Virus record (IMG/VR): IMGVR_UViG_3300044997_001199 | Coordinates: 1 to 64,000 of that record | Reading direction: 5' to 3' (one strand) | Length of the DNA: 64,000 nt | Shown here: piece by piece, positions 1 to 48,608 of the stretch | How positions within the stretch are numbered: position 1 is the first letter of the stretch | Layout of the letters: every line of letters begins with the position of its first letter | Program-made: the position numbers and the translations under genes | Notes under the pieces: generated by a model | Databases searched by the model: none | Seen by the model: only the letters and a program-made list of their open reading frames with translations | Told to the model about the DNA's origin: nothing

Positions 1-2
1 AT

Positions 3-359
3 ACTGCCCGAGGTAAAATCTGTGATCGTGATGCGATCGCCCGAGCTTTAGAAAGTGGTCATTTAGCAGGATACGCAGGAGATGTCTGGTTTCCACAACC
101 AGCACCCCAAAACCATCCATGGCGCACTATGCCAAATCATGGCATGACTCCACATATTTCTGGAACCAGTTTGAGTGCTCAGACTCGTTATGCGGCAGGT
201 GTGCGAGAAGTATTGGAATGTTATTTTGAACACCGCCCTATTCGCAATGAGTACTTAGTGGTCAAAGATGGTGTGTTGGCCGGTGTTGGCGCCCACAGTT
301 ACTCCAAAGGTAATGCCACAGGTGGTAGTGAAGAGGCGACAAAATATAAATATAGATAG
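3..359 (+). CDS. fdh: NAD-dependent formate dehydrogenase, C-terminal part (5' truncated by window edge)
   Basis: Frame open from base 3: TARGKICDRDAIARALESGHLAGYAGDVWFPQPAPQNHPWRTMPNHGMTPHISGTSLSAQTRYAAGVREVLECYF...AHSYSKGNATGGSEEA, recognisably the C-terminus of bacterial NAD-FDH (Pseudomonas sp. 101 type) including the catalytic PHISG motif. Confidence 0.93.
   Translation, partial: TARGKICDRDAIARALESGHLAGYAGDVWFPQPAPQNHPWRTMPNHGMTPHISGTSLSAQTRYAAGVREVLECYFEHRPIRNEYLVVKDGVLAGVGAHSYSKGNATGGSEEATKYKYR
345..352 (+). promoter_or_regulatory. T4-type late promoter TATAAATA overlapping the fdh 3' end
   Basis: Exact T4 late consensus; directly upstream of a tmRNA-acceptor-like fragment, as for the intact tmRNA at 48470. 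Confidence 0.55.
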
Positions 360-360
360 T

Positions 361-415
361 AGGTATTGCTGTATGAAGTATAAGGAAAGATGAAGTATAA
401 GGAAAGGTGGTTTGG
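361..415 (+). pseudogene. Truncated copy of the 5' part of the tmRNA acceptor piece
   Basis: Removing one 17-bp duplicate gives AGGTATTGCTGTATGAAGTATAAGGAAAGGTGGTTTGG, a 33/38 match to the minus-strand tmRNA acceptor start (48430-48467) AGTTATTGCTGTATGAAGTTGAAGGAAAGGTGTTCTGG. Confidence 0.7.
373..406 (+). repeat. Perfect 17-bp tandem duplication ATGAAGTATAAGGAAAG x2
   Basis: 373-389 and 390-406 are identical. Confidence 0.97.
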
Positions 416-434
416 TGGCACCAAACCACCCTAC
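406..434 (-). repeat. GTAG-family REP-like palindrome
   Basis: Minus strand GTAG + GGTGGTTTGGTG-C-CACCAAACCACC (perfect 12-bp inverted repeat after a GTAG tetranucleotide). Confidence 0.6.
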
Positions 435-527
435 GACAACATCACTGGTATCAGCCGCGCTGTGATGAAAGACAATGCGCGGGAAACCATTGCCAACTAC
501 AACGGTAATGCTCGACCCGGAGAATAG
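429..527 (+). pseudogene. Possible orphan 3' end of a gene (PYDNITGISRAVMKDNARETIANYNGNARPGE*)
   Basis: Open frame starting inside the REP end, phage-like codons, followed by GGTAAAT; no start or RBS. Confidence 0.3.
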
Positions 528-651
528 TGGTAAATTTGGCAGTGGCCCGCTAAACGGGTTCTGAGTGACAGCGTTGTATACAAGGGTGCCGACACAATCT
601 AAACTTCCGATGTTGTTCAGCGACCCAAATTGTCAAGAAGGAGATGTTTAG

Positions 652-1020
652 ATGAAGCGCGTTGTTCTGACTGCCCTGCTGTTGGGCTTTGCCGCTCCGG
701 TCCTGGCCGACGATGCCCCCTACACGGTCAAGGACGGGCTGGTCGATGGCAAGACCTTCAAGGGTTTCCAAACGTGGCGCTCTGCGGCCTGCGAGCGTTG
801 CCACGGTGCCAACCAGGAGGGCCTGGTCGGTCCATCCCTGATTGATTCGCTCAAAAAGATGACCAAGGACGAGGTGATGACCACGATCGCCAAAGGCCGG
901 CCGGAAAGGGGCATGCCCCCGCACGACGCGCTCGGTGCCGAAAAAATCGATGCGCTCTACTCTTACCTCAAGGGTCGATCTGACGGCGCATTTCCGACCA
1001 AGGTCAAGTCGTTCGAGTAA
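652..1020 (+). CDS. Exported monohaem class I cytochrome c
   Basis: Signal peptide (MKRVVLTALLLGFAAPVLA), CERCH haem motif, distal Met in RGMPP, strong RBS AAGGAG; GC3-rich codons unlike the phage genes. Confidence 0.9.
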   Translation: MKRVVLTALLLGFAAPVLADDAPYTVKDGLVDGKTFKGFQTWRSAACERCHGANQEGLVGPSLIDSLKKMTKDEVMTTIAKGRPERGMPPHDALGAEKIDALYSYLKGRSDGAFPTKVKSFE

Positions 1021-1278
1021 GCCGCTCCTGCCGGTTGGCGCCTCCCGATGTGAGAAAAACAAGTAAGTCCGGTGGGCGATGCTCAGTTTGCCATCGGGGC
1101 GATCCATAGAGGCACGGTAACTGCCGAGAACGGACGAGATGGGCGACGCGGCCGGTATTGGCATTGGCGCGGCTTACTACCGGCAATCGGGACAGGTGTT
1201 TGTGTGCTTGACCTGACCGATCAGCTGGGCGAGTCTGCAAAAATTCATAAATAATTTCGTAGAACACCGAGATAACGC

Positions 1279-1425
1279 ATGGTCAAACCCAAACCTACTG
1301 AAGTAACCCCTTGATATCTGCGCAACATCACCTTGACCCTGGCAGTGTCCTATACCGGTACCAACAGTGACTTGTTATATAAACTGGGCTGGGAAGAACC
1401 CACAAACCAGACGGAATCAAAATGA
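1279..1425 (+). pseudogene. Small phage ORF with one in-frame TGA (1312-1314)
   Basis: MVKPKPTEVTP*YLRNITLTLAVSYTGTNSDLLYKLGWEEPTNQTESK*; follows TAAATA at 1248 and ends in an ATGA overlap with the nuclease start. Confidence 0.5.
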
Positions 1426-1868
1426 AAACAATCTTAGCAACAGTGTTTACAGTATTCGCAATGATGGGCTCAGCCTATGCGCAGAAGCAGCCCAAAAATT
1501 CAGCCACAAATGACGCACAGGTCCTGCGTGTGATTGACGGCGATACCATCATTATCTCAGCACCATTCCTGCCAGCACCACTCAAGCCAGAACTCGCAGT
1601 TCGCATCTACGGAGTGGACACTCCGGAAAAAGGCCACCGTGCGCAGTGCCCAAGCGAAGATCAACGTGGGCAACTGGCTACCAAGTTTACCACACAGGCC
1701 GTGGCCCAGAGCACGGAGCGACGAGTGGTACTCTATGGTTGGGACAAGTTTGGTGGACGCGTGCTGGGCGACATCATGTTGGACGGTCGCAGCCTGCGTG
1801 CCATGCTAATCGAACAAGGGCTGGCGCGTGAGTACCACGGCGAAACCAAACAGAGCTGGTGCCGGTAA
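1422..1868 (+). CDS. Thermonuclease (SNase-like) family nuclease
   Basis: VIDGDT, RIYGVDTPE, DKFGGRVLG and GLAREY motifs; N-terminal signal-like segment. Confidence 0.9.
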   Translation: MKTILATVFTVFAMMGSAYAQKQPKNSATNDAQVLRVIDGDTIIISAPFLPAPLKPELAVRIYGVDTPEKGHRAQCPSEDQRGQLATKFTTQAVAQSTERRVVLYGWDKFGGRVLGDIMLDGRSLRAMLIEQGLAREYHGETKQSWCR

Positions 1869-3017
1869 CTAGATCTTGAACCACGACAGGTACTGATGCA
1901 CCCGATTGGTCACTGACGCCCAGTCATCAAATGCCGATTGCCGAAACAGTCTCGCGGCGGAATACCACGGCGAATCATCGCGATCCAACAGCCAGCGCCA
2001 GTCCACTCCAAACTTTTGCAACATCACCCAGGTGGGACGACCCAACGCACCACCGAGGTGTGCGATCGCAGTGTCCACACTGAGTATGACATCTTGATGA
2101 GCGATCAAGGCAGCGGTGTCGTGGAATCCGCGTATGGTACCGGGATACAGTTTCACACCGGCTGCAGCCAGAGCAGCACTTTCCTCTTCGGTGGCGTCGA
2201 TCTGTAGATTGGTCCACTCATACTGAGGATTTTTCTCAATTAGATCTAGCATGACTCGGAAAGGCATGCCCTTGTGCTGGTTCAGCCAGGAATCTCTACG
2301 GCCGGACCAGGAAAAACCCACACGCATGCGAGTTTTTGGTCCCAGGCGCTCCTGCCATCTCTGGGTCAACTCACGGTCCGCAGACATGTAACTGACTGGC
2401 CGCGGCAGATTGTCGTAGGTCACACCCAATATTCCGGGAATGCTCATGACAGGCACCCAAACATCAAACTCGCCCGGGTCATCGGTGTAGGTACCAGCCC
2501 AGGCAACCACAGCACTGCCTTGGAACATGGGCACCAGGCCCGCGGTGACCTGCAATTTTATTCGTGCACCCATGACATGCAGATTGTAGGCAAAACGAGA
2601 AAACTGTATGTTGTCTCCGTGGCCTTGCTCGCCTACGATTAGCACAGTCTTGCCCTGGAGGTCTTCACCACGCCATCGCGGCTGTGCAAACTTGGGTTCG
2701 GTTCCGGCTAGATGTTCGTAGTTCCATCGGGCCTCGTAGGCCGGCCATCCCTGGCGCAGATTGCCCATGAGAAGATGAGTGACAGCCAGATTGAACTGTG
2801 CAGTGACATTGTTGGGTTCCAGCGTCAGAGCCTGCTGTAAAAAAGGTACGGCTGATCCTGGCTCCCCTATTTCTCGCAGCACGTTGCCGTAGTTGTTAAA
2901 GGCCGCAGCTGATCTGCGATCCTGTGCAAAGGCCTGTGCATAACAGGTCAGTGCCTGCTCGTACTGACGCTGTTCTCTGTGTTGATTGCCGATTACAATG
3001 AGTTCTTGGGTTTGCAT
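1869..3017 (-). CDS. TPR-repeat protein fused to a GT9/heptosyltransferase-like domain
   Basis: TPR helices (AFNNYGNVLRE, AQFNLA) then EQGHGDNIQF and DVILSVDTAIAHLGGALGRPTW..DWRW motifs. Confidence 0.8.
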   Translation of the reverse strand: MQTQELIVIGNQHREQRQYEQALTCYAQAFAQDRRSAAAFNNYGNVLREIGEPGSAVPFLQQALTLEPNNVTAQFNLAVTHLLMGNLRQGWPAYEARWNYEHLAGTEPKFAQPRWRGEDLQGKTVLIVGEQGHGDNIQFSRFAYNLHVMGARIKLQVTAGLVPMFQGSAVVAWAGTYTDDPGEFDVWVPVMSIPGILGVTYDNLPRPVSYMSADRELTQRWQERLGPKTRMRVGFSWSGRRDSWLNQHKGMPFRVMLDLIEKNPQYEWTNLQIDATEEESAALAAAGVKLYPGTIRGFHDTAALIAHQDVILSVDTAIAHLGGALGRPTWVMLQKFGVDWRWLLDRDDSPWYSAARLFRQSAFDDWASVTNRVHQYLSWFKI

Positions 3018-3061
3018 GGAAGATATTTACTCACGCTAGATAATTGATTGTAGATTATTGG

Positions 3062-3067
3062 TAAATA
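3062..3067 (+). promoter_or_regulatory. Late promoter TAAATA, with a divergent copy on the minus strand at 3024-3029
   Basis: Same hexamer recurs upstream of many structural genes. Confidence 0.6.
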
Positions 3068-3151
3068 CTTGTCAACGCAAACGGCGTTTTATGCGGAAAC
3101 CACCGCGTAGTGGCTAGAACCCACATCGGACTTCTTTAAAGGAGAAAACAA

Positions 3152-3901
3152 ATGGGACGTCCTCTCAAAATTCAAAAACTTTCCACCGGCTCGGGCAACA
3201 GCGGAGAGTCAGTCGGTGTGGATCTTGGCTTTCCTAACTTTGGAAGCCTGACCAATCCGGTCTACAACACCGCTGACACCCTCAACAGCACACAGTTTCT
3301 GGGTGTGGTTGGTGGAGCCAACCCCACAGATACCCCCAGCACCACATTTCCTCGAGTGAGAGTGATTGTCAACATACAGCTGACATCAGGATCGGGTCAA
3401 GGTGTGGCCACTGGTTACATCATCCGCCAAAAAGGTGCCCACAAGTACCTGGTAGGATCAACCACTACCGTCCAGGACGAAGGCATCGTGACTGGAAATT
3501 CCTACATCATTGCCACAGTGGGCAGCACTGACTGGACACTGTTTGGCGCACCAGCTGGCTATGCAGTGGGCACAGTGTTTACAGCCACTGCAGAAGGTTC
3601 CAACAACGGCAATGGTACCTGTAACCTAGTGGGAGTCTGCGTGCTGGATGACGATACCACACCTGCTGCAGGATTGATGGCCATTACCTATACCCTGGGC
3701 GACTCCACGGCCACTACCATCAGCAAATTAACCAACAAGTGGTTGTTGAACTGGGCCGGCGGCAGTGATTATGCTGCTACCAGTGTGGTCAATAATCAAC
3801 GCTATGCGGCCAACTTCTTCACCGACGAAGGCACAGTGATCAAGTCAGGCACACCGCAAACCGCTGTGGAACTGGCCATAGTAGACAACGTCACCTCATA
3901 A
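3152..3901 (+). CDS. Hypothetical virion structural protein
   Basis: 249-aa Thr/Gly-rich ORF, RBS AAGGAG, late promoter upstream. Confidence 0.75.
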   Translation: MGRPLKIQKLSTGSGNSGESVGVDLGFPNFGSLTNPVYNTADTLNSTQFLGVVGGANPTDTPSTTFPRVRVIVNIQLTSGSGQGVATGYIIRQKGAHKYLVGSTTTVQDEGIVTGNSYIIATVGSTDWTLFGAPAGYAVGTVFTATAEGSNNGNGTCNLVGVCVLDDDTTPAAGLMAITYTLGDSTATTISKLTNKWLLNWAGGSDYAATSVVNNQRYAANFFTDEGTVIKSGTPQTAVELAIVDNVTS

Positions 3902-3950
3902 AAGTGTTGTGATATCCGGTCCTTCCAGATACATACTGGAAGGACTTTTT

Positions 3951-4538
3951 ATGCCCGCAGCATTTGTGTTAGGTAATGGACGCAGTCGTCTAGCAGTGAA
4001 TCTCCACGAATTAAAACTTCGCGGGCCTATCTATGGATGCAATGCTCTCTATAGGGAATTTGTTCCTGACACATTGATCAGCACAGATCGACCTATCAGT
4101 GAGCGCATACAGCAGGAAGGATATGCGCTTAAAAATCGCATGTATACCCGCAAGCCCATGGCTCAATGGGGGGCTTTGCCGGTACCTCAAGAATACTATG
4201 GATTCAGTTCAGGGCCAATCGCAATGGCACAGGCCGCACTGGACGGCCATTGTGTGCTGTATCTCCTGGGATTTGACCTTGGTCCAGATGCCTTGGGCAA
4301 ATTCAACAATGTCTATGTTGACACAGAATTTTATAAAAAAAGCTCGGCCAGTCCCACCTTTACTGGTAACTGGGTCCGGCAAATCTGTCAGATAATGAAA
4401 ACCTTTCAGCGAGTGAGTTTTGTCAGAGTAGCCGGAGATACCACTGCTCCTGTTGCGGAATTCCAAACACATCACAATCACTGTGTCATGCCAATAACGG
4501 AATTTTTAGACCGTATAAATAATCTAAAGGATCTATAA
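3951..4538 (+). CDS. Hypothetical protein, possibly a sugar/nucleotide transferase-like fold
   Basis: AFVLGNGRSR...GCNALYR...LLGFD pattern; ATG at 3951 after RBS. Confidence 0.6.
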   Translation: MPAAFVLGNGRSRLAVNLHELKLRGPIYGCNALYREFVPDTLISTDRPISERIQQEGYALKNRMYTRKPMAQWGALPVPQEYYGFSSGPIAMAQAALDGHCVLYLLGFDLGPDALGKFNNVYVDTEFYKKSSASPTFTGNWVRQICQIMKTFQRVSFVRVAGDTTAPVAEFQTHHNHCVMPITEFLDRINNLKDL

Positions 4539-7130
4539 ATGGCCACTTTCAAGCGCATCAATGGCAATTATACTATCAAAACTCTAAATCACACGGACAC
4601 AGTCACTGTGGACGCTGTCAACACTGTGATCACCGGCGATCTAACAGTGCAGGGCAATGCCACATTGGTTGGTAATATCAATGCTGATCGTATTTTTTAT
4701 GGTAATTCCAGCGTGGAAATACCTGTTCCGGGCGGCAATGTCGCGGTGTCAGTGGACGGAACCAGCAACGTAGCGGTGTTTTCGTCATCGACGCTGTCGG
4801 TGTCTGGCAACATTGCAGGCAACTACTTTCTAGGCAACGGCAGTCAGTTGATCGGGGTGGTAGCCACGGATCTTGGCGTGATACCCACTCTCAGCGTGAC
4901 CGGAAATATCGATGCAGGCAATGTGCGTACCGCTGATCAGATCTCGGCCACAGGCGATGTCACTGGCGGCAACCTGCTGACATCGGGCAATGTGTCCTCT
5001 CAAGGCAATGTAATTGCCACGCAGTTCCGTGGTGACCTGATTGGCAGTGTGTTTGCTGACGATTCCAGCTTGATCGTGGATGCCATTGACAGTTGTATCT
5101 TTGCTAACTCAGTAGCAGCACTGGGCAACGTCACTGGCGGCAATTTCATCACTGCAGGAACAATCACTGCCACTGGTAATATCGTTACTGCAGGAACCTT
5201 TGTTGGTAATTTTTCAGGCAACATCACTGGAAATTTAACAGTGCCCGGATCCAACACACAGATCATTTTCAACAATCAGGACAATGCAGCGGCATCAAGT
5301 GCATTTACCTTTGACTCGGCCGGTAATACTCTGACTGTGGCAGGTACGGCCACAGTCACAGGCAACGTCGTGGCTGGCAACGTCAATACCGCTGATCAGA
5401 TATCAGCAACCGGCAATGTCACCGCAGGCAATGTGTTGGTCGGGGACACGGTCAATGCCACCACGTATACCGGAACCGCAGTTTCTGTGACCGGTAACGT
5501 CACTGGTGGCAACCTGATTTCCAGCAACATTGTGTCCAGCAACCTTACCATGACAGCAGCAAATGTGACCTTTGCGCTGTCAGGCAATGTAAATCTAGGC
5601 ACCAGTTATATCAACAATGTAAACTCTCCCATACAAGGCAGTGATGCAGCTACCAAACAATATGTAGACGATTCGGTGTCCACCGGAATCATCATACACA
5701 CCCCGGTTCGTGTGGAGTCGCCCACAGCTCTGACTGCCACGTATGCACCGGGGGGAAATGTGTTCACGGTGACCGATACCATAGACGGCAACACCGTGGT
5801 GTTCAGCACCGCGGCCAACCTGCAGGTCAACGACCAGTTGTGGTTTGCCAATTCTTTCCAAGGTATCACAGCCAACAACGCTTATTTCGTGGTGTCCGCA
5901 CCCAACACCAGCGCAGCGGTGTTGACCACTACCTACAATGGTTTGCCGGTCAGCAATATCACATCGGCGTCGGGGATGACTCAATCGGTGCGTGTGAATT
6001 CAGGTGTCGGTGCCACCCTGACCAATGCCGGGGACAATGCTGCATTGATAATCGATGGTATCACACTGGCAGCCAACGATCGGGTATTAGTGTATACTCA
6101 GGCCAATGCTGCTCACAATGGTGTATACACAGTGAGCAACGTGGGCAATGCCACTGTGGCCTGGGTCATGACCAGGTCTTCCGACACAGATACATATGCA
6201 CCAGACGACATCAACGCCTTGGACGCCGGTGATTATTTTTTTGTACAACAAGGTGACACCGGCGAGGGCGAAAGCTATGTGATGACCTTACCAGTGGGTC
6301 CACTGATCATAGGCTACAACAATCTGGTGTTCACACAATTTTCAGCCAGCAAGGCCTATCAAGCCGGCGATGGGCTGACACTGACTGGCACCACATTCAG
6401 TGTTAATATTGACAACACTACCACGGCCATCGTGGCCGATGTGGTAGTAGTTAAATCTGGAGCCAACCTAGTCACACCCAACATTGGCAATGCTACAGGC
6501 AACAGTCTCACACTGGACGGCAACGGTGCGATCAATACAACCACGGCCACGGCCACCGGTAACATTGTTGGTGGTAATGTCCTAACCGCAGGCCTGATTT
6601 CGGCCACTGGCAATGTGTCAGGCGGTAACTTGTCGGCCGGGCTTGGCACAGTTACCCTTGGCAATATCGTAAATGCCAACGGCAACGGAGTAGGCAATAT
6701 CGGCAGTGCTTCGTTGTATTTCGATACAGTGTTTGCCAAGGCTACGTCTGCGCAATACGCGGACTTGGCCGAAATGTATGCAGCAGACAGTCACTACGAA
6801 ACGGGCACAGTATTGTCCATGGGCGGAACCCACGAAGTAACATTATCTAATCATGCCAACGATCAACGAGTGGCCGGAGTAGTGTCGGCCAATCCGGCCT
6901 ATATCATGAACACAACTATCCAGGCACAATATCCAGTAGCATTGGCATTGGCCGGTCGCGTTCCTACCAATGTGATTGGCCCAGTACGCAAAGGAGACAT
7001 GATGGTAGCAGCTGGTAACGGCCGCGCACAGTCCTGCACCGCACCTGCGATTGGTACCGTGATTGGCAAAAGTCTCGAGGATTTCGATGGAATCCACGGC
7101 ACTATCGAAATAATAGTGGGCCGCCTGTGA
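4539..7130 (+). CDS. Fibre/appendage protein with GN-rich repeats and C-terminal intramolecular chaperone (peptidase G2-like) domain
   Basis: TGNV-GGN repeats; C-terminal SAQYADLAEMY...AGVVSANPAYIMN...GRVP...GDMMV...IGKSLE. Confidence 0.8.
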   Translation: MATFKRINGNYTIKTLNHTDTVTVDAVNTVITGDLTVQGNATLVGNINADRIFYGNSSVEIPVPGGNVAVSVDGTSNVAVFSSSTLSVSGNIAGNYFLGNGSQLIGVVATDLGVIPTLSVTGNIDAGNVRTADQISATGDVTGGNLLTSGNVSSQGNVIATQFRGDLIGSVFADDSSLIVDAIDSCIFANSVAALGNVTGGNFITAGTITATGNIVTAGTFVGNFSGNITGNLTVPGSNTQIIFNNQDNAAASSAFTFDSAGNTLTVAGTATVTGNVVAGNVNTADQISATGNVTAGNVLVGDTVNATTYTGTAVSVTGNVTGGNLISSNIVSSNLTMTAANVTFALSGNVNLGTSYINNVNSPIQGSDAATKQYVDDSVSTGIIIHTPVRVESPTALTATYAPGGNVFTVTDTIDGNTVVFSTAANLQVNDQLWFANSFQGITANNAYFVVSAPNTSAAVLTTTYNGLPVSNITSASGMTQSVRVNSGVGATLTNAGDNAALIIDGITLAANDRVLVYTQANAAHNGVYTVSNVGNATVAWVMTRSSDTDTYAPDDINALDAGDYFFVQQGDTGEGESYVMTLPVGPLIIGYNNLVFTQFSASKAYQAGDGLTLTGTTFSVNIDNTTTAIVADVVVVKSGANLVTPNIGNATGNSLTLDGNGAINTTTATATGNIVGGNVLTAGLISATGNVSGGNLSAGLGTVTLGNIVNANGNGVGNIGSASLYFDTVFAKATSAQYADLAEMYAADSHYETGTVLSMGGTHEVTLSNHANDQRVAGVVSANPAYIMNTTIQAQYPVALALAGRVPTNVIGPVRKGDMMVAAGNGRAQSCTAPAIGTVIGKSLEDFDGIHGTIEIIVGRL

Positions 7131-7152
7131 TGTCAGACCTGGACAGTACTGC

Positions 7153-7572
7153 CTAGGTCACCGAGTCGAGTTTTTGTAATACAGACTCTATGTTCACGGT
7201 ATTCCATAGTCCAGGGTGCATGGGCCGAGGCCATTGACCTGGGTCGATCCAGGCATATCCCAGGTGCTCGGTGTTCAGTCGCGGTTGGAACTCGTCCTTG
7301 ATCACACAGATCCAGGTGTTGTATTCAAATCTACCGTCGGCTGTGGTGAACTTTTCCAATGGAACCAACCGACGATAGGTCGGAAAATGCCCCAATTCTT
7401 CGCTGCATTCTCTTTGCATGCCTTGTAGCAGGGTTTCCCCAGGCTCAATTTTTCCACCGGGCAATCCCCAAGTTCCGGGATTTTTACAATCATTTCTTAG
7501 CAAGTAGAGATACCGCTCAGTGGCAGCACTCCTGAACCATACACCCACTGCCTTTACAACACCAGTCTCCAT
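7153..7572 (-). CDS. NUDIX hydrolase
   Basis: Nudix box GGKIEPGETLLQGMQRECSEELG; start position uncertain. Confidence 0.88.
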   Translation of the reverse strand: METGVVKAVGVWFRSAATERYLYLLRNDCKNPGTWGLPGGKIEPGETLLQGMQRECSEELGHFPTYRRLVPLEKFTTADGRFEYNTWICVIKDEFQPRLNTEHLGYAWIDPGQWPRPMHPGLWNTVNIESVLQKLDSVT

Positions 7573-8960
7573 TTGCCCCCCACATATGTTCCTTGATAAC
7601 TTTTGACCCACATCTCCCCGGTCCATCGATACTGGATACCACTGGTAATGTTGGTAATATATTGTATGGCAGTTTCCTGCGCAGCATGAAACAGCACACG
7701 CCAGTAACCGTAATCGTCATCGTACTCGATGATATCATTGGCTTCGGCGATCAAAGACCGTCCGTTGTGCCCGATCCAGGCTGTGGGATTGCTTTGGTTG
7801 TCAAAATTTCCAGTGGCTTCGGTAAGCAGATATCTTTGCCCAGGTTGTGTGGGAGGCAGCCTGTCGCCGGGTCCGCTGATTAATGGATCAACCACAGCAT
7901 CAACTGGGGGCAAGGTGTTTTGCGGAATAGTATCGATGTCTACGTCGTAGATCACAAAGATATCATCGTTGGGATCAACCACAATGGTACCAATCACGTC
8001 GGTGCCATCGGGCTGTTCCAGTCGAATCTGGCTGATTCCTGGACGCAGAGTTCCATACATGTTGATCACAGCAGGCCATTGTAGGGTTGAAGTTAGCAGT
8101 GGCTCAGGATCGACCAACGCGTCGTTGTCGGGCTCTCGGCTGAGATCCTGCTGCTCAAGACATTGTATTCGATTGCCAAGCACTACCAGCGCATAGTTAA
8201 ACGGAGTCACAACCACTCTGGTACCCAACAATAGATCATTGTTGATCACGGCCTCGGCTAGATCGCCCTGGGCATCATGCATGCTTATGATTATGCGTTC
8301 TACCACGCCCAGTTTTTTTACCTTGGCCGGGGGTGACAACCAGATCGGCAGGTTGAATTTCACGGTTGCGATGTCGATGGGATTTTCAGTGCCTACGGGA
8401 ATCACACGACTGGACCAGTTAACCGATTCCAGTTCCAGCACAGTAAGACTGGTCCAGTCGATAAAGTTGTCTGTGCTCTGGATTTCGAGACTGGGATTGA
8501 ACAGTGTCAACATCTGTTCCAACAGTTGTAGTTTCTGATTGGTGTTGGAGGTCCAGATGTCAAGATTGATAGTTAATTGATACGGAACCGGCATCAGTCG
8601 TTCTATGGTAAATGCATTGCCTTGTGTGGTTTCGTAGGTTTCAGTGGAGGTATCGTAGGTCCGCTGTCTTACCGATACCTTGCTTACATGATAGGGTTCT
8701 TGCATGCGCGGCCGATCATAGTTCAGTGCTGCGATGTAAAAGGTCATCATAGGCGTAGCAGGCATGGAATTTTTGCTGTTTTCCTGCAGTATGGTCTGGG
8801 CCTGGCGGCTGGCATCCCCGTAGCGCACAGGCACACGTATCAACGCAGCAGCATTGCCATCTTCATCTCTGCCATATTCGACCTGAAAGTTGCTGACAAT
8901 GCGAGTGAACTGAAGGAGAAATCTGCGTATTTGTTCGTCGTAGAAAAATTGAGATACCAT
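7554..8960 (-). CDS. gp15: T4 gp15-like tail sheath stabiliser/terminator with C-terminal extension
   Basis: FFYDEQIRRFLLQF, VPVRYG, PVPYQLTINLDIWT...QLLEQMLTLFNPS pattern; lies in neck/tail cluster. Confidence 0.7.
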   Translation of the reverse strand: MVSQFFYDEQIRRFLLQFTRIVSNFQVEYGRDEDGNAAALIRVPVRYGDASRQAQTILQENSKNSMPATPMMTFYIAALNYDRPRMQEPYHVSKVSVRQRTYDTSTETYETTQGNAFTIERLMPVPYQLTINLDIWTSNTNQKLQLLEQMLTLFNPSLEIQSTDNFIDWTSLTVLELESVNWSSRVIPVGTENPIDIATVKFNLPIWLSPPAKVKKLGVVERIIISMHDAQGDLAEAVINNDLLLGTRVVVTPFNYALVVLGNRIQCLEQQDLSREPDNDALVDPEPLLTSTLQWPAVINMYGTLRPGISQIRLEQPDGTDVIGTIVVDPNDDIFVIYDVDIDTIPQNTLPPVDAVVDPLISGPGDRLPPTQPGQRYLLTEATGNFDNQSNPTAWIGHNGRSLIAEANDIIEYDDDYGYWRVLFHAAQETAIQYITNITSGIQYRWTGEMWVKSYQGTYVGGKWRLVL

Positions 8961-9517
8961 TATTCTTTTTCCATATAAATTCTTTTGCCATCTACAATTT
9001 TCCAAGTTTTACCACGAGTACCACTGCGTTCTAATTGGATTTGTCTAATTTTTTCTTTAGCACAATCTGGCATAGACCATCGTCCTTTTATTCCTCTTCC
9101 AGTATGAGCTTTACCCTTCATAGCACCACCATCTCGTCTTGTCCGGGTATCGGTACCTAACGCGCGCCGACGTGCATGAGCCTTTCTTTGTGATTCTCGC
9201 ATTTTTTCTATGCTTTTTGGGTTATGTAATTTGTTGCCACCGGCTTCTCTATTGTTATAAACAACAGCAATTTTTTGATAATGTTCCAACCAGGCCTGTT
9301 CTTTTTCGTTTAGCTTGTTGATATTGTTGGCGGCATCTATCACTTTCCACAAAAAATTTTCGATGCCATATTTTCTCACGCTATCATAAAGATAGCTTTT
9401 GCGTCCTTTATGCATGTAATCACAATGGGCATACCATCTTATCTTAGGATTTTTTTGAACCGTTTGTCCAATGTACACTTTGTTATTGATCTTGTTAGTA
9501 ATCTTATAAATGTGCAT
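8960..9517 (-). CDS. Free-standing GIY-YIG homing endonuclease
   Basis: HIYKITNKINNKVYIGQT motif, basic C-terminal DNA-binding tail, AT-rich relative to neighbours. Confidence 0.88.
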   Translation of the reverse strand: MHIYKITNKINNKVYIGQTVQKNPKIRWYAHCDYMHKGRKSYLYDSVRKYGIENFLWKVIDAANNINKLNEKEQAWLEHYQKIAVVYNNREAGGNKLHNPKSIEKMRESQRKAHARRRALGTDTRTRRDGGAMKGKAHTGRGIKGRWSMPDCAKEKIRQIQLERSGTRGKTWKIVDGKRIYMEKE

Positions 9518-9521
9518 AATC

Positions 9522-10916
9522 CTACTCGCTAAATGGTGGATACTTCACATTGGGCTGCCCGGGCTGGGTGCCAGGCCGCAGCCGTGTGGGCTTGTTGCCG
9601 TTGTCATTGCCATTGTCCGCACGAGGTCTCAACAGTTCACTCAGGCTCTGGCGACTGGGAATGTTTCCTTGATCAGTAGTGGGCACTGTGTAGTCATTGT
9701 TGACAAAACTGCTGCGCAGTGTGTTGTTGTCTGGGCGGTTGTTGAGGTTGGTGCGCACTTTGTCTTCGATTTTGACCCAGCGGTTACCATTGAAACGGAA
9801 CAGCCTGTTGGGGAAATAGTCTAGACGTAGGCAAAAATCTCCGCTGCTGGCATTTGGGGGGAAAGTCACACCAGTGCTCACAGGCAGTCCATTGGGAGGA
9901 ATTCCGTCTCCGGTGAGATATCCAACAGTGTATCCGTCGGCACGCGGGCTGACTCCCAGCCCGTCCTGCTGATCGTCCACTGTGATCCCGCTGTCGGCCG
10001 TGAGACCTGCGGGATCTGCAGGTTGACCATTGGCCCGGGTAGCCAACACATAATATTTGGATACATCATAGCCTGACAATGGAACTTCAACATCGGCCTG
10101 AGTCAGTATGGCATCGTTGATTTCTTGATCCTTGGGTCGGGTACTGAATTGGTCGCTCTGCATTGGAGGAACATAGATCTGCCAGAAAGTATTGTTGGTG
10201 ATGTCGGTTCCGGCCGGAACATTTTGACTGGCCTGATAGTAGGTGTTTCCGTAGTTTACGATGGACCCGCCGGGATAAAAATTACCTGGATCCCAGATCT
10301 GTTGAGAAACCACGGGTTTTTTGAGTATGTCAGCGTATTCCTGCGCGTTGGTCAAAGGCGTGGCTTTGACTCTCCATAGGTGCGGTAACCAGGTCTGGCT
10401 GAATCCTTCCGATGCATATGCAGCATCTTGTATCACGTAGTATTTGGGCAGCGGCTGGGCAATATTGGCATTGAGAGGGTAATAATCCAGCAACGATGGT
10501 ATTTCTAACACGTCACCGGTCATGAGTTTGCGGCCAAAGGTGTCGAGCATGTCGTTGAAGTGGAATGTGATAAACAGTGTGTCGTTGTTGAGAAACAGCC
10601 CAAACTGGGTAAGGTCAAAATCCACGTCCGAGGTATTGAATACTCCGCGCATGACGTAGATGTCGTTGTCGTAGCGCCGATCACGGTTTTCCAACAGCAG
10701 CAGATCCTGTATGTGCAAGGGCGACAGCGTGTCATAGATTGGCTGAGTGGCATCACCTTTGCTTGACAGGGCAGAATCTTCGCCACTGGTGTCAGGTCCA
10801 AGAAATTTGTGCACATAAACATCTGCTCCGCCCACTGTGTACATTTCTGAAATGGTGCGATCGAGAAATTGATAGTCGCGAGTGCGATTGGAGCGATAGA
10901 GACTGAGCCTTGGCAT
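9522..10916 (-). CDS. gp14: T4 gp14-like neck protein with an inserted carbohydrate-binding-like module
   Basis: Neck-protein-like N-terminus (DYQFLDRTISEMYTVGGADVYVHK...GDVLEIP); internal WDPGNFYPGGSIVNYGNTYYQA module. Confidence 0.6.
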   Translation of the reverse strand: MPRLSLYRSNRTRDYQFLDRTISEMYTVGGADVYVHKFLGPDTSGEDSALSSKGDATQPIYDTLSPLHIQDLLLLENRDRRYDNDIYVMRGVFNTSDVDFDLTQFGLFLNNDTLFITFHFNDMLDTFGRKLMTGDVLEIPSLLDYYPLNANIAQPLPKYYVIQDAAYASEGFSQTWLPHLWRVKATPLTNAQEYADILKKPVVSQQIWDPGNFYPGGSIVNYGNTYYQASQNVPAGTDITNNTFWQIYVPPMQSDQFSTRPKDQEINDAILTQADVEVPLSGYDVSKYYVLATRANGQPADPAGLTADSGITVDDQQDGLGVSPRADGYTVGYLTGDGIPPNGLPVSTGVTFPPNASSGDFCLRLDYFPNRLFRFNGNRWVKIEDKVRTNLNNRPDNNTLRSSFVNNDYTVPTTDQGNIPSRQSLSELLRPRADNGNDNGNKPTRLRPGTQPGQPNVKYPPFSE

Positions 10917-10939
10917 AACACTATTTACCGAGTCGGCAC

Positions 10940-10968
10940 TTGACCAGAAACATCACTCTGAGTATAAT
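10940..10968 (+). promoter_or_regulatory. sigma70-type promoter
   Basis: TTGACC-N17-TATAAT. Confidence 0.8.
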
Positions 10969-10997
10969 TACCATACTGTTGATAGGAAGGGACCACA

Positions 10998-12140
10998 ATG
11001 ATCACCACAGTTGCAAAATTGAAGCCAATGAATCCCGGTACCGCAGATGTCAAGTACACTGGCATCGAGCCTTGCTGGGAGCAACAATCTCAATACGGCG
11101 ATCAAGTGAGCCGTCTCACCAAAGCATTCAGTTGGTATAACTACCACTACGGACGCAAAGAGGCGCGAGACATCATCACGGCTTATCTCGAACATCAAGA
11201 ACGCAAGGACGATGTCAAGAATTTCCGCAAAGTGGGCGACAACGATGTCAACCTTACCGCGGCCTGGCTCTGCCGCATGAGCATGCTGGGTCTGGTGTTG
11301 ACCGAGCAAGAGCAACAACAGTTACAAGATCGCATCGACTGTATGTTGAAAACAACCATGAACCAAGCGGCCGTGACACAAGAACCACAGACCGTCGTGG
11401 ACAAACCCAACATCCAGGAACGTCTGCGCGAAAAAATGATCGAATGTGCTGGCGAAATCGAAGGCATGTTCGATGATTTCCTTCTGGGTGGTGCTCGGAT
11501 CACCGCGGAACACAAGCCCGTGAACCTGCTGAGAAGCAAAAATGTAGCCCCAAATCTAGTGGCAGAAATCGCCACGCTGTGGCAAGCGCGACTGCAAGAA
11601 ATCGTACAGGTCCTGGGCGGCCAGGATGATCAGCTGACCGAGGGCTGGAGCAACTATAGCAAAGCTCAGTTGCGGTCAATTGAGAAATTCTGCGAGTCTG
11701 TGATCAACAATTGCAGCGCCTATGTGCAGATCAAGAAAATCGAAACCAAACCGCGCCGCGCCAAGAAAGTTTCTCCCGAACAACGTGCTCGTAAGTTTCG
11801 TTGTGCTACAGAAATCGAGGAGTTTGGAGTCAAGGGTCTACCGGCCACTGGACTGGTCGATTGCTCGGAAGCATGGTTGTATGATGTCAAGAAACGCAAG
11901 CTGATCCATGTGGTAGCCGACAGGCACGTGGGGCGATTTACCATCAAAAACAACATGTTGATTGGTATCAGCCCGGCTGATACCCTACAAAAAACTCTAC
12001 GCAAGCCGGCAGAAATAGTCAAGGCGATTGCAGCAGCAGGCAAACCTGCTGCCCGCAAGATTTTTGCAGAACTTACCACGACCGGAACCCAATTCAACGG
12101 CCGCGGCAACGAACATGTCGTGATCCTCAAAACCTGCTAA
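10998..12140 (+). CDS. Hypothetical protein
   Basis: 380-aa ORF with RBS GGAAGG behind a sigma70 promoter. Confidence 0.8.
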   Translation: MITTVAKLKPMNPGTADVKYTGIEPCWEQQSQYGDQVSRLTKAFSWYNYHYGRKEARDIITAYLEHQERKDDVKNFRKVGDNDVNLTAAWLCRMSMLGLVLTEQEQQQLQDRIDCMLKTTMNQAAVTQEPQTVVDKPNIQERLREKMIECAGEIEGMFDDFLLGGARITAEHKPVNLLRSKNVAPNLVAEIATLWQARLQEIVQVLGGQDDQLTEGWSNYSKAQLRSIEKFCESVINNCSAYVQIKKIETKPRRAKKVSPEQRARKFRCATEIEEFGVKGLPATGLVDCSEAWLYDVKKRKLIHVVADRHVGRFTIKNNMLIGISPADTLQKTLRKPAEIVKAIAAAGKPAARKIFAELTTTGTQFNGRGNEHVVILKTC

Positions 12141-45065: not shown

Positions 45066-45140
45066 TGGTACCTGGTGACGGGATCGAACCGCCGACCTTC
45101 TCCTTGTAAGGGAGACACTCTACCGCTGAGTTAACCAGGC
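45066..45140 (-). tRNA. tRNA-Val (TAC)
   Basis: Complete cloverleaf, loop CT-TAC-AA, TTCGATC T-loop, encoded CCA. Confidence 0.95.
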
Positions 45141-45145
45141 AATTC

Positions 45146-45180
45146 TAGTCGGAGTGCAAGGATTCCAACCCTACACTCCA
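45146..45180 (-). pseudogene. tRNA remnant folded as an acceptor+T-arm minihelix
   Basis: TGGAGTG-TAGGG-TTGGAAT-CCTTG-CACTCCG-ACTA; D and anticodon arms absent. Confidence 0.7.
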
Positions 45181-45183
45181 AAT

Positions 45184-45262
45184 TGGTCTCGATGGCAAGA
45201 TTCGAACTTGCGACATCCTGCTCCCAAAGCAGGCGGAATGAACCAGACTATCCTACACCGAT
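45184..45262 (-). tRNA. tRNA-Pro (TGG), first base pair mismatched
   Basis: Cloverleaf with CCTGC-TTTGGGA-GCAGG, CCA; A1:G72 mismatch. Confidence 0.88.
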
Positions 45263-45263
45263 T

Positions 45264-45337
45264 TGGTGGAGGATAACAGAATCGAACTGTTAATCTCGGC
45301 TTGCAAAGCCGATGTTATCCCATTTAACTAATCCCCC
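45264..45337 (-). tRNA. tRNA-Ala (TGC)
   Basis: G3:U70 identity pair, loop TT-TGC-AA, CCA. Confidence 0.93.
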
Positions 45338-45342
45338 AAACT

Positions 45343-45419: not shown

Positions 45420-45425
45420 ATATTC

Positions 45426-45455: not shown

Positions 45456-45462
45456 ATAAAAA

Positions 45463-45538: not shown

Positions 45539-45564
45539 TTAAAACTATATATCTCTTTTATTGC

Positions 45565-45654: not shown

Positions 45655-45661
45655 AATTTTT

Positions 45662-48128: not shown

Positions 48129-48157
48129 AAAGAAAATGGCCCATCGCTGGGCCATTT
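48129..48157 (-). terminator. Intrinsic terminator after the tmRNA coding piece
   Basis: AAATGGCCCA-GCGA-TGGGCCATTT then TCTTT. Confidence 0.8.
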
Positions 48158-48467
48158 GGTCGTTCTGTTGCCAGGTGACCAACCCCGACAGATCAAGCCG
48201 CTAGGCGGAGATCCTCAGCATAAACGTCGTCATTGGCGTTTATAAGTTTTGCTAGGTTTACGACCTTCGCCTCTCGTGCTGTCTGTATCTGTACTCATTT
48301 GTCCTGTCGAAACCAAAACCGGCCCATCATAAGCATACTAGATTTTATCGATACTACCGAATAATGGGAGGGCGACTCCATCTTACACCAGTATGCTTAT
48401 GGTGGACCGGGCGAGAGTCGAACTCGCGTCCAGAACACCTTTCCTTCAACTTCATACAGCAATAACT
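48130..48467 (-). ncRNA. ssrA: Circularly permuted two-piece tmRNA
   Basis: Acceptor piece ending GTTCGACTCTCGCCCGGTCCACCA (CCA at 48400) lies upstream of the coding piece starting GGGCCGGTTTTGGTTTCGAC (48325); G3:U70; tag ANDDVYAEDLRLAA* at 48237-48193. Confidence 0.92.
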
Positions 48468-48608
48468 GTTATTTATGTATTTTTTTGAACAGTCGGCAGT
48501 CTTCTGTGCTTCTTCGTTGTACCACAGACGTCGAGTGTAGTCCTGATCGATGTCCCGAAGATACTGGTCGGTGAAATACTTCACATGACCCTTGACCAAA
48601 TAAAACAA
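48354..48608 (-). CDS. Small hypothetical protein; 3' part reads into the tmRNA, so its true end is uncertain
   Basis: MFYLVKGHVKYFTDQYLRDIDQDYTRRLWYNEEAQ looks coding; the remainder overlaps promoter and RNA. Confidence 0.4.
   Translation of the reverse strand: MFYLVKGHVKYFTDQYLRDIDQDYTRRLWYNEEAQKTADCSKKYINNSYCCMKLKERCSGREFDSRPVHHKHTGVRWSRPPIIR

What the first reader, a model, noticed from the sequence alone, without database searches (positions are those of the whole stretch)
1..1253. Patchwork of short bacterial and phage fragments at the window start
Seen: five unrelated pieces in 1.25 kb, namely an fdh 3' end, a late promoter plus tmRNA-acceptor fragment with a 17-bp duplication, a GTAG-type palindrome, an orphan gene tail and a GC-rich cytochrome c block, before normal phage sequence resumes at TAAATA (1248). 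Joints overlap by a few shared bases (GGTG; CCCTAC). Inference: this is either a capture hotspot filled by repeated microhomology recombination, a host/prophage boundary, or a chimeric assembly.
Basis: partly seen in the sequence, partly recalled or inferred. Interest (0 to 1): 0.7.

Follow-up and report, generated by a model that had tools for sequence, protein, structure and literature searches.

The report
Host cytochrome gene captured by phage
The window starts in a real gene-shuffling hot spot just behind the capsid gene of a large T4-like lake phage, holding a cut-down tmRNA gene, two wrecked phage genes and a newly captured 617-bp piece of a co-occurring bacterium's chromosome with a whole cytochrome c gene. 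It is a well-documented example of a known kind of phage genome plasticity, not an assembly error or a prophage edge.

Summary
The patchwork is real, but several pieces were misread. Window position 1 is the end of a 215-kb viral contig, so the fdh "3' end" is a complete 400-aa NAD-formate dehydrogenase gene cut by the assembly. A 99.97%-identical contig from another sample continues upstream into a T4-like head module (gp20, gp21, scaffold, gp23, IscA).

- **343-409:** late-promoter-like TATAAATA plus the first ~28 nt of a permuted beta-type tmRNA, with a perfect 17-bp tandem duplication. Sister phages carry an intact tmRNA here. This phage has an intact copy at 48.1-48.5 kb.
- **406-430:** a unique perfect palindrome. 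Its right arm is the start of a small conserved phage gene.
- **416-538 and ~1145-1216:** head and tail of that 98-aa gene, so the "orphan tail" is a head.
- **539-1155:** a bacterial chromosomal block lying between that head and tail, made of an intergenic region, a complete cytochrome c gene and the 3' end of the convergent neighbouring gene. It is near-identical to a betaproteobacterium in the same lakes.
- **1279-1425:** collapsed relic of a virion structural gene.

All joints occur in four lake metagenomes at phage depth. This refutes a chimera and a host boundary, and supports capture by illegitimate recombination. Whether the cytochrome functions in the phage is unknown.

The parts
1..359 (+). 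3' 119 codons of a complete NAD-dependent formate dehydrogenase gene (400 aa), cut by the contig end and not by recombination
   Evidence: Window 1 = G000:C1:1. The full gene is at L006 9155-10357, 99.97% identical in the overlap. It scores 693 bits against NCBIfam NF005750, cut-off 329. Pfam 2-Hacid_dh_C also matches.
345..352 (+). T4-type late-promoter-like TATAAATA, overlapping the last fdh codons
   Evidence: One of 2 exact copies in 64 kb; the other lies 17 nt before the fibre gene ATG at 4539. The relaxed motif ATAAATA sits 24-32 nt upstream of several large + strand ORFs and upstream of the intact tmRNA.
367..409 (+). Relic of a permuted (two-piece) tmRNA gene: only the first ~28 nt (5' strands of the pairing helices), with no T-arm, acceptor or tag
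   Evidence: Alignment A1 with the intact copy and with sister phages L007, L008 and L014-16, which have an intact tmRNA directly after fdh. Rfam RF04321 position 1 maps to the equivalent base of the intact copy. No Rfam hit to a tmRNA family in window 1-1500.
373..406 (+). Perfect 17-bp tandem duplication (373-389, 390-406) of the tmRNA relic sequence
   Evidence: the repeat finder family D3, 100% identity. Sister phages have a single copy.
406..430 (.). Perfect 12+1+12 palindrome at the tmRNA-relic/small-gene joint. The right arm is native start-of-gene sequence and the left arm is its inverted copy.
   Evidence: I3, 100% complementary. Single copy in the genome and in all loci. The right arm aligns with the first codons of homologous genes.
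416..538 (+). Head (about codons 1-44) of a small conserved 96-98-aa phage gene. The start region is disturbed and there is a 1-nt deletion near 525. It is a pseudogene.
   Evidence: phmmer gives 114 listed hits (one is this ORF itself); in the other 113, query residues 5-39 match protein residues 4-38, up to 89% identity. An HMM of 28 family members hits 420-527 with i-E 1.3e-16. The frameshift is visible in alignments A2.
539..1155 (+). Block of betaproteobacterial chromosomal DNA (59% GC) inserted in the small gene
   Evidence: It is colinear with bacterial loci L085-L093, 85% identical over the gapped alignments, with conserved bacterial synteny. The closest genomes are Burkholderiales and Rhodocyclaceae MAGs. 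The bacterial flanks appear as loose ends at 539 and 1152-1155. The block is present on bacterial contigs up to 22.5 kb in runs that lack the phage.
652..1020 (+). Complete c-type cytochrome gene (122 aa) with signal-peptide-like N-terminus, a CERCH haem motif, and its own AAGGAG ribosome site at 638-643
   Evidence: Pfam PF13442 and PF00034. 93% aa identity to a bacterial protein from the same sample series. No PHROG family. The only viral contig that encodes it is the same strain.
1047..1066 (+). Scar where the bacterium has ~42-47 further nt, a hairpin plus T-run that reads as the intrinsic terminator between the convergent genes. These are absent from the phage.
   Evidence: Alignment gaps against L092 and L093. 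Joint '1060 to 1066, 47 letters between' in bacterial contigs. Loose ends at 1047, 1060 and 1066.
1081..1155 (-). Last ~25 codons of the convergent bacterial membrane-transport (Mem_trans/auxin-efflux family) gene, a non-functional stub
   Evidence: blastn against L086 4307-4386, 80%. The C-terminal peptide SAVTVPLWIA..AN* is recognisable.
1145..1216 (+). Tail (last ~20-26 codons plus stop at 1214-1216) of the same small 98-aa phage gene. Its first ~8-11 nt overlap the end of the bacterial block.
   Evidence: HMM positions 72-97 hit 1133-1210 with i-E 4e-4. This is the only other hit in the six-frame 215-kb genome; the next best has E 1.7. tblastn of P0126 residues 72-98 ends exactly at the stop.
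1247..1253 (+). Late-promoter-like ATAAATA, 32 nt before the ATG of the next relic
1279..1425 (+). Collapsed relic of a ~500-aa virion structural gene ('X', phrog_1645). The head (28 codons, with Trp changed to TGA at 1312-1314) is fused to the last ~16 codons. Its stop overlaps the SNase ATG.
   Evidence: tblastn of L176 X: residues 1-28 match 1279-1359 (57%, E 9e-5) and residues 491-506 match 1357-1404 (colinear, weak). X followed by SNase occurs in L176, L189, L247, L238, L219 and L199. PHROG assignment.
1422..1868 (+). Intact staphylococcal-nuclease-like gene, where undisturbed phage backbone resumes
   Evidence: Pfam SNase. phrog_452. At least 592 related stretches in IMG/VR.
48131..48519 (-). 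The phage's intact permuted beta-type tmRNA (tag ANDDVYAEDLRLAA), followed by a tRNA cluster. It shares its first ~65 nt (promoter-like motif plus 5' helix strands) with 342-409.
   Evidence: ARAGORN. RF01850 scores 121.9 bits (gathering 84) and RF04321 scores 123.1 bits. blastn 342-392 against 48486-48436.

Best explanation
Window 1-1425 is the accessory-gene zone that follows the major capsid gene of a large T4-like freshwater myophage. The contig is 215 kb and CheckV rates it 61% complete.

The resident order is gp23, IscA, FDH, tmRNA, a small 98-aa gene, structural gene X, SNase.

In this strain three kinds of illegitimate-recombination event have left scars.

1. **tmRNA deletion.** The fdh-linked tmRNA was deleted from its ~29th nucleotide up to the start of the small gene. 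The joint is decorated by a 17-bp direct duplication and a 12-bp inverted duplication. This is shown. That it arose by replication template switching or fold-back repair is inferred. The loss was tolerable because an intact tmRNA sits at 48 kb.
2. **Host DNA capture.** A 617-bp piece of the chromosome of a co-occurring betaproteobacterium, presumably the host, replaced the middle ~33 codons of the small gene. It consists of an intergenic region, a complete cytochrome c gene and the 3' stub of the convergent neighbouring gene. Both joints fall on short sequence coincidences, roughly GCAGTGG on the left and GCGGCCGG on the right. The capture and the bacterium-to-phage direction are shown. The microhomology mechanism is inferred. 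The transfer is very recent: 0-1 differences over ~490 nt to the bacterial strain in the source lake.
3. **Collapse of gene X.** X was reduced by an internal deletion and a nonsense codon.

The cytochrome c gene keeps its own ribosome site and signal peptide. No terminator is predicted between it and the late-type promoter at 345, and the bacterial terminator behind it is missing. It would therefore be transcribed late with the downstream nuclease. This expression model is inferred and untested.
For: **Contig end and independent reproduction**
- Window position 1 is the contig end. A second assembly reproduces window 1-11017 at 99.97%.
- T4-like Gp20, S77 protease and Gp23 lie upstream. FDH is an equivalog match.

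**tmRNA**
- Five sister contigs have an intact permuted tmRNA directly after fdh.
- The intact copy sits at 48 kb. The relic gives no Rfam hit.

**Small gene**
- Its head and tail are the only two HMM hits in the genome, and they flank the block.
- In relatives the small gene sits right after Gp23 (L261), before SNase (L260), or before the TPR gene (L262).

**Bacterial block**
- It is colinear with conserved bacterial synteny (ispDF, two-component system, hypothetical gene, cyt c, Mem_trans, PPK2, aconitase) in several MAGs.
- GC is 59%, against 49.5% for the phage and 62-67% for the bacterial loci.

**Read-level support**
- Logan contigs of four runs bridge 331-568 and 1104-3000+ at depths 32.5 and 38.7. 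The shared piece is at 87, and bacterial flanks appear as loose ends.
- Three other runs hold the bacterial version on contigs up to 22.5 kb with no phage present.
- The only 3 mismatches between the two phage assemblies in 11 kb fall at positions where the bacterial allele differs.

**Other points**
- The cytochrome is absent from all other IMG/VR contigs scanned.
- Codons of relatives at both joints show the shared short strings.
- X relic and X-then-SNase synteny. Late-promoter motif pattern. No + strand terminator predicted in 1-2000.
Against: - The exact parental phage allele is unknown, so the microhomology lengths are inferred from relatives that are only ~70-80% identical.
- The tail match of the small gene is short (26 positions, i-E 4e-4) and overlaps the bacterial block by ~8-20 nt.
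- The tail half of the X relic is not significant on its own (E 1.7).
- Logan records are compacted contigs, not raw reads. Their depths are means, and they can merge near-identical alleles, so '0 differences' to the bacterium in run X1 could hide a minority variant.
- No sigma-70-like promoter was found for the cytochrome on the + strand. No RNA data were available. The acquisition is too recent for any test of selection. The gene may therefore be a neutral passenger.
- The closest named bacterial genomes carry a one-piece tmRNA whereas the phage carries a permuted one, so tmRNA type gives no independent support for the host assignment.
- The order and number of events cannot be reconstructed.
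Confidence: 0.8

Rival explanations
1. Chimeric assembly. The assembler threaded a phage contig through a bacterial sequence, and the patchwork does not exist in any molecule.
For: There are coverage steps: about 53 over 1-360, 33 over 331-568, 87 over 539-1025 and 39 beyond 1104. One IMG/VR contig (L005) stops at window 665 inside the shared block. The window's contig itself starts inside fdh.
Against: The same joints occur in an independent 98-kb contig from another sample. They also occur in k-mer contigs of four runs, bridging 331-568 and 1104-3000 at phage depth. The depths are additive in each run: phage plus bacterium over the block, phage plus sister phage over fdh. Contig breaks are expected exactly where two genomes share words.
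Confidence: 0.03
2. Host/prophage boundary. The window start is the edge of an integrated phage, and fdh and the cytochrome belong to the bacterial chromosome.
For: tmRNA genes are classical integration sites, and ssrA fragments are known in prophages (established knowledge, also stated in PMC9004378). The cytochrome block is truly bacterial.
Against: Upstream of fdh lie a T4-like portal, prohead protease, scaffold and Gp23. The bacterial DNA is 617 bp with phage genes on both sides. The uninterrupted bacterial locus exists separately, including in runs without the phage. FDH occurs in 116 viral contigs.
Confidence: 0.02
3. Reverse direction. The cytochrome block is an old phage gene that the bacterium acquired from the phage.
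For: Near-identity alone does not give a direction.
Against: The block and its neighbours are syntenic across several divergent Burkholderiales and Rhodocyclaceae MAGs at 75-85% aa identity. Its GC matches the bacteria rather than the phage. The phage copy carries a truncated stub of the bacterial neighbour gene and lacks the terminator. Only this phage strain has it. No PHROG family matches.
Confidence: 0.02
4. The palindrome is a mobile REP-type element (GTAG head plus hairpin) or a purpose-built terminator, rather than a repair scar.
For: On the minus strand it reads GTAG followed by a perfect 12-bp hairpin. It lies just behind fdh, where a transcript end would be useful once the tmRNA was lost.
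Against: It is single-copy in the 215-kb genome and in 2.57 Mb of related phage and bacterial loci. The 'GTAG' and the right arm are the conserved Pro-Pro-Tyr coding start of the small gene. No T-run follows it on the + strand, and it is not called as a terminator.
Confidence: 0.08

Closest known systems
Hypervariable (plastic) regions between core modules of T4-like aquatic myophages (cyanomyophages, pelagimyophages), which carry auxiliary metabolic genes
   Same: The region lies between conserved structural modules, with Gp23 upstream and the TPR/glycosyltransferase and fibre genes downstream. Gene content differs between close relatives. It carries metabolic genes, including a formate dehydrogenase, which is also reported in some pelagimyophages (PMC7029224).
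   Different: Here the zone lies immediately after gp23 rather than in the described host-recognition cluster. One cargo can be traced to a near-identical donor locus in the same samples, with host flanking remnants still attached.
Two-piece (permuted) tmRNA genes of aquatic T4-like phages such as the OM43 phage Melnitz
   Same: The phage has a permuted ssrA next to tRNA genes. This is common but not universal in the group (PMC9004378). The intact copy here scores above the Rfam gathering thresholds.
   Different: This copy is beta-type rather than alpha-type. The genome holds a second, truncated copy at the position where sister phages keep their tmRNA. No glutamine riboswitch was looked for.
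Morons of lambdoid phages, and host-gene capture by illegitimate recombination (established concept)
   Same: A foreign-composition insert carrying one complete gene sits between resident phage genes and is absent from sister genomes.
   Different: There is no recognisable promoter or terminator of its own; the terminator is in fact missing. The insert destroys a resident conserved gene instead of sitting between genes. The carrier is a lytic-type T4-like phage, not a temperate one.
ssrA fragments in prophages left by imprecise excision
   Same: A partial tmRNA gene inside a phage genome.
   Different: The fragment is the 5' end of the phage's own type of permuted tmRNA, orthologous to intact genes of sister phages. 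It is not the 3' end of a host gene at an att site. No bacterial DNA adjoins it.

Membership tests
Hypervariable accessory region of a T4-like myophage | Flanked by conserved T4-like core genes | tested here: met
   Portal_T4, Peptidase_S77 and Gp23 lie upstream. The TPR gene, the 249-aa and 209-aa genes and the fibre genes downstream are shared with L262.
Hypervariable accessory region of a T4-like myophage | Gene content differs among close relatives while the flanks are conserved | tested here: met
   L007 and L008 (fdh 98-99% nt) switch to other sequence at 378-392. L261 has Gp23 followed by the small gene, L260 has the small gene followed by SNase, and L179 and L196 have IscA followed by SNase.
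Host-derived gene capture (moron/AMG acquisition) | Colinear with a host chromosomal locus, including partial neighbours | tested here: met
   539-1158 aligns colinearly with L092 and L093. The neighbour-gene stub is at 1081-1155.
Host-derived gene capture (moron/AMG acquisition) | Absent from sister phages; composition foreign to the phage | tested here: met
   Only the same strain among the IMG/VR contigs scanned. GC 59% against 49.5%.
Host-derived gene capture (moron/AMG acquisition) | Own promoter and terminator (classical moron) | tested here: not met
   No + strand sigma-70-like site or terminator in 1-2000. The bacterial terminator segment is missing.
Host-derived gene capture (moron/AMG acquisition) | Expressed and beneficial during infection (AMG in the strict sense) | not testable with these tools
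   No RNA run was listed. The divergence from the donor is too small for a selection test.
Permuted tmRNA gene (the 367-409 piece) | T-arm, acceptor end with CCA, tag reading frame; score above the Rfam gathering threshold | tested here: not met
   No tmRNA hit in 1-1500 even at E up to 10. Homology to intact genes stops before the T-arm. The copy at 48131-48519 does meet these criteria.
REP / GTAG-headed palindromic element | Many dispersed copies in one genome | tested here: not met
   A single copy in G000 and in 2.57 Mb of loci, allowing 1 mismatch.
Prophage-host junction at a tmRNA gene | Continuous bacterial synteny beyond the boundary | tested here: not met
   10 kb upstream is phage head module.
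Assembly chimera | Joints not reproduced in independent data | tested here: not met
   Joints are reproduced in another assembly and in contigs of four runs.

The most novel reading that the evidence does not exclude
This may be an auxiliary metabolic gene caught at birth. A lytic T4-like phage picked up a periplasmic c-type cytochrome from its betaproteobacterial host within the lifetime of the sampled lake populations. The gene was placed under a late promoter next to a phage NAD-formate dehydrogenase and an Fe-S assembly protein, and it is retained because it re-routes host electron flow during infection. If so, the joints show directly how such genes enter lytic phage genomes: short-homology template switching, at the cost of a resident gene.
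Probability: 0.2. Interest if true: 0.7.

Novelty: new member of a known kind. Interest (0 to 1): 0.45.

Why it matters
Host-gene capture by phages is usually inferred from old, diverged genes whose joints have eroded. Here four things are visible together in public lake metagenomes:
- the donor locus, on bacterial contigs up to 22.5 kb;
- the recipient gene, with head and tail still recognisable;
- both joints;
- sister phages without the insert.

This gives a direct phage-host link, to a Burkholderiales/Rhodocyclaceae-like freshwater bacterium. It also offers a natural example for studying the mechanism and fate of newly captured genes. For annotation, it is a caution that coverage steps and contig breaks at such places come from sequence shared between phage and host, not from misassembly.

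Tried and rejected
- **Phage GenBank collection:** blastn of 1-1300 found nothing.
- **Circular junction or terminal repeat:** the other contig end carries no fdh 5' part and no terminal repeat.
- **432-527 as the tail of the bacterial gene upstream of the cytochrome:** no match.
- **Source of 406-545:** A degenerate-codon scan of IMG/VR found only the same strain. The exhaustive phmmer search then solved it.
- **fdh relic upstream of the intact tmRNA**, tested as a sign of segmental duplication: none found; homology is limited to 342-409.
- **Intact copies of gene X or of the small gene elsewhere in the 215 kb:** none. The genome is incomplete, so absence is not shown.
- **Permuted tmRNA in the candidate host MAGs:** they have one-piece tmRNAs.
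- **Transposon-like target duplications or inverted repeats around the block:** none.
- **Small gene next to fdh or SNase in 160 related loci:** found only in L176, so the ancestral fdh-to-small-gene spacing cannot be reconstructed.
- **RNA runs:** none listed.
Full report
**Where the window lies.** The window is the first 64 kb of a 215,330-bp IMG/VR viral contig, classed as linear and rated 61% complete by CheckV. Window position 1 is therefore an assembly end. The other contig end carries neither the missing fdh part nor a terminal repeat. An independent 98-kb viral contig from another sample (loci L004/L006) is 99.97% identical over window 1-11017 and continues upstream. Read downstream toward the window, that region holds:
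- a homing-endonuclease-like gene;
- a T4-type portal (Pfam Portal_T4, 342 bits);
- a prohead protease (Peptidase_S77);
- a scaffold-like gene;
- a Gp23 major capsid protein (323 bits);
- an IscA/HesB-like Fe-S protein;
- a complete 400-aa NAD-dependent formate dehydrogenase (NCBIfam NF005750, 693 bits, cut-off 329).

The 'fdh 3' end' is therefore a whole phage-borne gene truncated by the contig edge, and there is no bacterial synteny upstream. FDH relatives occur in at least 116 viral contigs, mostly in unrelated contexts.

**The tmRNA piece.** ARAGORN and Rfam find an intact permuted tmRNA at 48.1-48.5 kb on the minus strand. It scores 121.9 bits against RF01850 beta_tmRNA (gathering 84) and 123.1 bits against RF04321, and is followed by eight tRNA genes. 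Window 342-409 repeats its first ~65 nt. This comprises a TATAAATA or CATAAATA motif and the 5' strands of the helices that open the permuted RNA.

Five related contigs have an intact permuted tmRNA directly after fdh. They are L007 and L008, with fdh 98-99% identical at the DNA level, and L014-L016. Homology of the window to them stops at 378-392, just before the T-arm. No tmRNA family matches window 1-1500, even at E up to 10. The piece is thus the stump of the orthologous tmRNA gene. The 17-bp duplication (373-389/390-406) is perfect, and sister phages have one copy.

TATAAATA occurs only twice in 64 kb; the other copy lies just ahead of the fibre gene at 4539. The relaxed ATAAATA lies 24-32 nt before several large ORFs. 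This fits the T4-type late promoter consensus. That consensus is established knowledge; its function here is inferred.

**The palindrome and the 'orphan tail'.** The palindrome 406-417/419-430 is perfect. It is unique in the genome and in 2.57 Mb of fetched phage and bacterial loci, so it is not a REP-type repeat.

An exhaustive phmmer search with the translation of 408-524 listed 114 proteins, one of them this ORF itself. In the other 113, query residues 5-39 align with residues 4-38 at up to 89% identity. Those proteins range from 37 to 1131 aa and are fibre-like. The piece is therefore a gene head, not a tail. The right palindrome arm and the following CCCTAC are its first codons (Pro-Pro-Tyr), as alignments with L256, L176 and L260-L263 show. 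The left arm is an inverted copy of them.

The closest full-length relatives form a tight family of 96-98-aa proteins. In relatives this small gene lies:
- directly after Gp23 (L261);
- directly before SNase (L260);
- before a TPR gene, a 269-aa gene, a 208-aa gene and fibre genes that match the window's downstream genes (L262).

An HMM of 28 family members was searched against the six-frame translation of all 215 kb. It gives only two hits. The head (positions 4-39) lies at 420-527 with i-E 1.3e-16. The tail (positions 72-97) lies at 1133-1210 with i-E 4e-4 and is followed by a stop at 1214-1216. The next best hit has E 1.7. A 1-nt deletion near 525 breaks the frame.

**The bacterial block.** Between head and tail lies 539-1155. 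The cytochrome (652-1020) is a 122-aa class I c-type cytochrome (PF13442, PF00034). It has a signal-peptide-like N-terminus and a CERCH motif (read).

Its best protein matches (93-75% identity) come from metagenomic bacteria, some from the same sample series as the phage. Named genomes are Burkholderiales, Rhodocyclaceae and Betaproteobacteria MAGs at 85%, 81% and 75%.

In those bacteria the gene sits in a conserved neighbourhood: ispD, ispF, a two-component system, a hypothetical gene, the cytochrome, a convergent Mem_trans gene, PPK2 and aconitase. Window 539-1158 is colinear with this locus from 13 nt after the upstream gene's stop, through the cytochrome, and into the last ~25 codons of the convergent gene. 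A 42-47-nt hairpin plus T-run between the two genes is present in the bacteria and missing in the phage.

GC is 59% for the block, 49.5% for the phage and 62-67% for the bacterial loci. Among the IMG/VR contigs scanned, only the same phage strain encodes this protein, and no PHROG family matches it. The direction of transfer is therefore bacterium to phage.

**Read-level evidence.** The sequence is held by lake-water metagenomes. In four runs the compacted contigs break exactly where another genome shares words. Depths in run X1 are:

| Contig (window coordinates) | Depth in X1 |
|---|---|
| 1-360 | 53 |
| 331-568 | 32.5 |
| 539-1025 | 87 |
| 1104 to beyond 3000 | 38.7 |

The contigs 331-568 and 1104-3000+ bridge the joints of the tmRNA relic, the palindrome, the gene head and both edges of the block, all at phage depth.

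Loose ends show the alternatives:
- At 389, the intact tmRNA of a co-occurring sister phage.
- Before 539, the bacterial upstream flank.
- Behind 1152-1155, the rest of the bacterial Mem_trans gene.

The depth of the shared piece equals phage plus bacterium. In X3 the parts are 22 and 31.5 against 61.6 for the shared piece. In X4 they are 6.9 and 15.7 against 22.9.

In three further runs the phage is absent (depth 0 at 401-500 and beyond 1200). The block is nevertheless present at depth 27-53 on bacterial contigs up to 22,563 nt. These carry 5-6 differences per ~452 nt and include the extra terminator segment.

In run X1 the shared contig shows no difference from the window over 487 nt. The only three mismatches between the two phage assemblies in 11 kb (748, 783, 835) are positions where bacterial strains differ. 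The capture is thus very recent, and the donor population co-exists with the phage. The coverage steps and the contig ends (L005 stops at 665; the window's contig starts inside fdh) are consequences of shared sequence, not of misassembly.

**The part after the block.** 1247-1253 is another late-promoter-like motif. 1279-1425 is the relic of a ~500-aa virion structural gene (phrog_1645). Residues 1-28 of the L176 homologue align to 1279-1359 at 57% (E 9e-5), with TGA replacing a conserved Trp codon at 1312-1314. Residues 491-506 align colinearly to 1357-1404; this part is weak on its own. The stop overlaps the SNase start. The homologue precedes SNase in six other viral contigs. SNase (1422-1868) and everything beyond it are intact.

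**Mechanism.**

Shown:
- Deletion of the tmRNA body up to the start of the small gene, with a direct and an inverted duplication at the joint.
- Replacement of the middle of the small gene by 617 bp of host DNA.
- Internal collapse of gene X.

Inferred: all three are products of illegitimate, short-homology recombination. Templated duplications of both orientations at the first joint suggest template switching or fold-back priming.

At the block's joints, relatives of the small gene read AAT CTT GCA GTA GAT CC. The window and the bacterium read GCA GTG GCC CG there. On the right, the relatives' Ala-Ala-Gly codons (GCN GCN GGT) coincide with GCGGCCGG at the bacterial side. This would give 5-8 nt of overlap at each end. 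The true parental allele is unknown. No target duplications or terminal inverted repeats flank the block.

The expression model rests on four points: the cytochrome's own AAGGAG site, no predicted terminator between 345 and 652, loss of the bacterial terminator, and overlap of the X relic's stop with the SNase ATG. It is untested, and no RNA run was listed.

**Comparison with what is known.** T4-like aquatic myophages are described as conserved modules separated by hypervariable regions with auxiliary metabolic genes. A formate dehydrogenase has been noted in some pelagimyophages (PMC7029224). Two-piece tmRNAs are frequent in this group, and ssrA fragments are known in prophages (PMC9004378). 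The present locus is a member of that kind. Two points are not routine: the near-identical donor in the same samples with host flanking remnants still attached, and the type of cargo. A full-text search for phage- or virus-encoded cytochrome c returned essentially nothing.

**Limits.**
- The candidate host MAGs have a one-piece tmRNA with tag ANDESFALAA, while the phage's is permuted. The host assignment therefore rests on the captured block alone.
- Whether the cytochrome is useful to the phage cannot be told.
- The genome is incomplete, so loss of the small gene and of X from the whole phage is not shown.

Noticed in passing
window 45066-48519 (-): An intact permuted beta-type tmRNA is followed by eight tRNA genes. 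The tag peptides differ sharply among phages whose fdh is 98-99% identical: ANDDVYAEDLRLAA here, ANDSDYTMALAA in L007, ANDEKFALAA in L008. The candidate host MAGs have a one-piece tmRNA with tag ANDESFALAA.
   Followed up: partly
window 49279-51381 (-), and 48.9-49.4 kb: A 700-aa ORF just upstream of the tmRNA contains an IDPPYN motif typical of DNA methyltransferases. The stretch between it and the tmRNA has only short overlapping ORFs. It may be another accessory or foreign patch.
   Followed up: no
L006 1910-2425: A homing-endonuclease-like gene (phrog_314) sits immediately before the T4-like portal gene in the contig that extends the window upstream.
   Followed up: no
L006 8396-8652 and L008 6166-6506, against G000 166204-166541: A ~260-340-nt segment between Gp23 and IscA is 72-73% identical to a place 166 kb into the window's contig, on the opposite strand. 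It is a dispersed repeat or a small duplicated gene.
   Followed up: no
G000 116429-116729 (-), and the last ~600 nt of G000: There are tandemly repeated coding segments. One is GGTGGTTTGGTCACAGCC units spaced 51-99 nt apart near 116.5 kb. The other is a ~190-nt repeat in the gene at the far contig end, which probably explains why the assembly stops there.
   Followed up: no
window 1422-1868; loci L176-L255: The staphylococcal-nuclease-like gene has at least 592 relatives (66-79% aa) in IMG/VR contigs with almost no shared neighbours. It behaves like a widely travelling accessory gene itself.
   Followed up: partly
L005 (IMGVR_UViG_3300044953_000820) end = window 665; window position 1: Both contig ends fall inside sequence shared with another co-occurring genome: the bacterial cytochrome locus, and the fdh of sister phages. 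This is a practical sign that assembly breaks mark shared sequence.
   Followed up: yes
window 416-538; proteins P0122-P0234: The ~38-aa N-terminus (consensus M-A-N-P-P-P-P-Y-D-N-I-T-G-I-S-R-A-V-M-K-D-N-A-Q-E-T...N-Y-N-G-N-A-R-P-G-E) is shared by proteins from 37 to 1131 aa with fibre-like repetitive bodies. It looks like a common attachment module of unknown function with no Pfam or PHROG family.
   Followed up: partly
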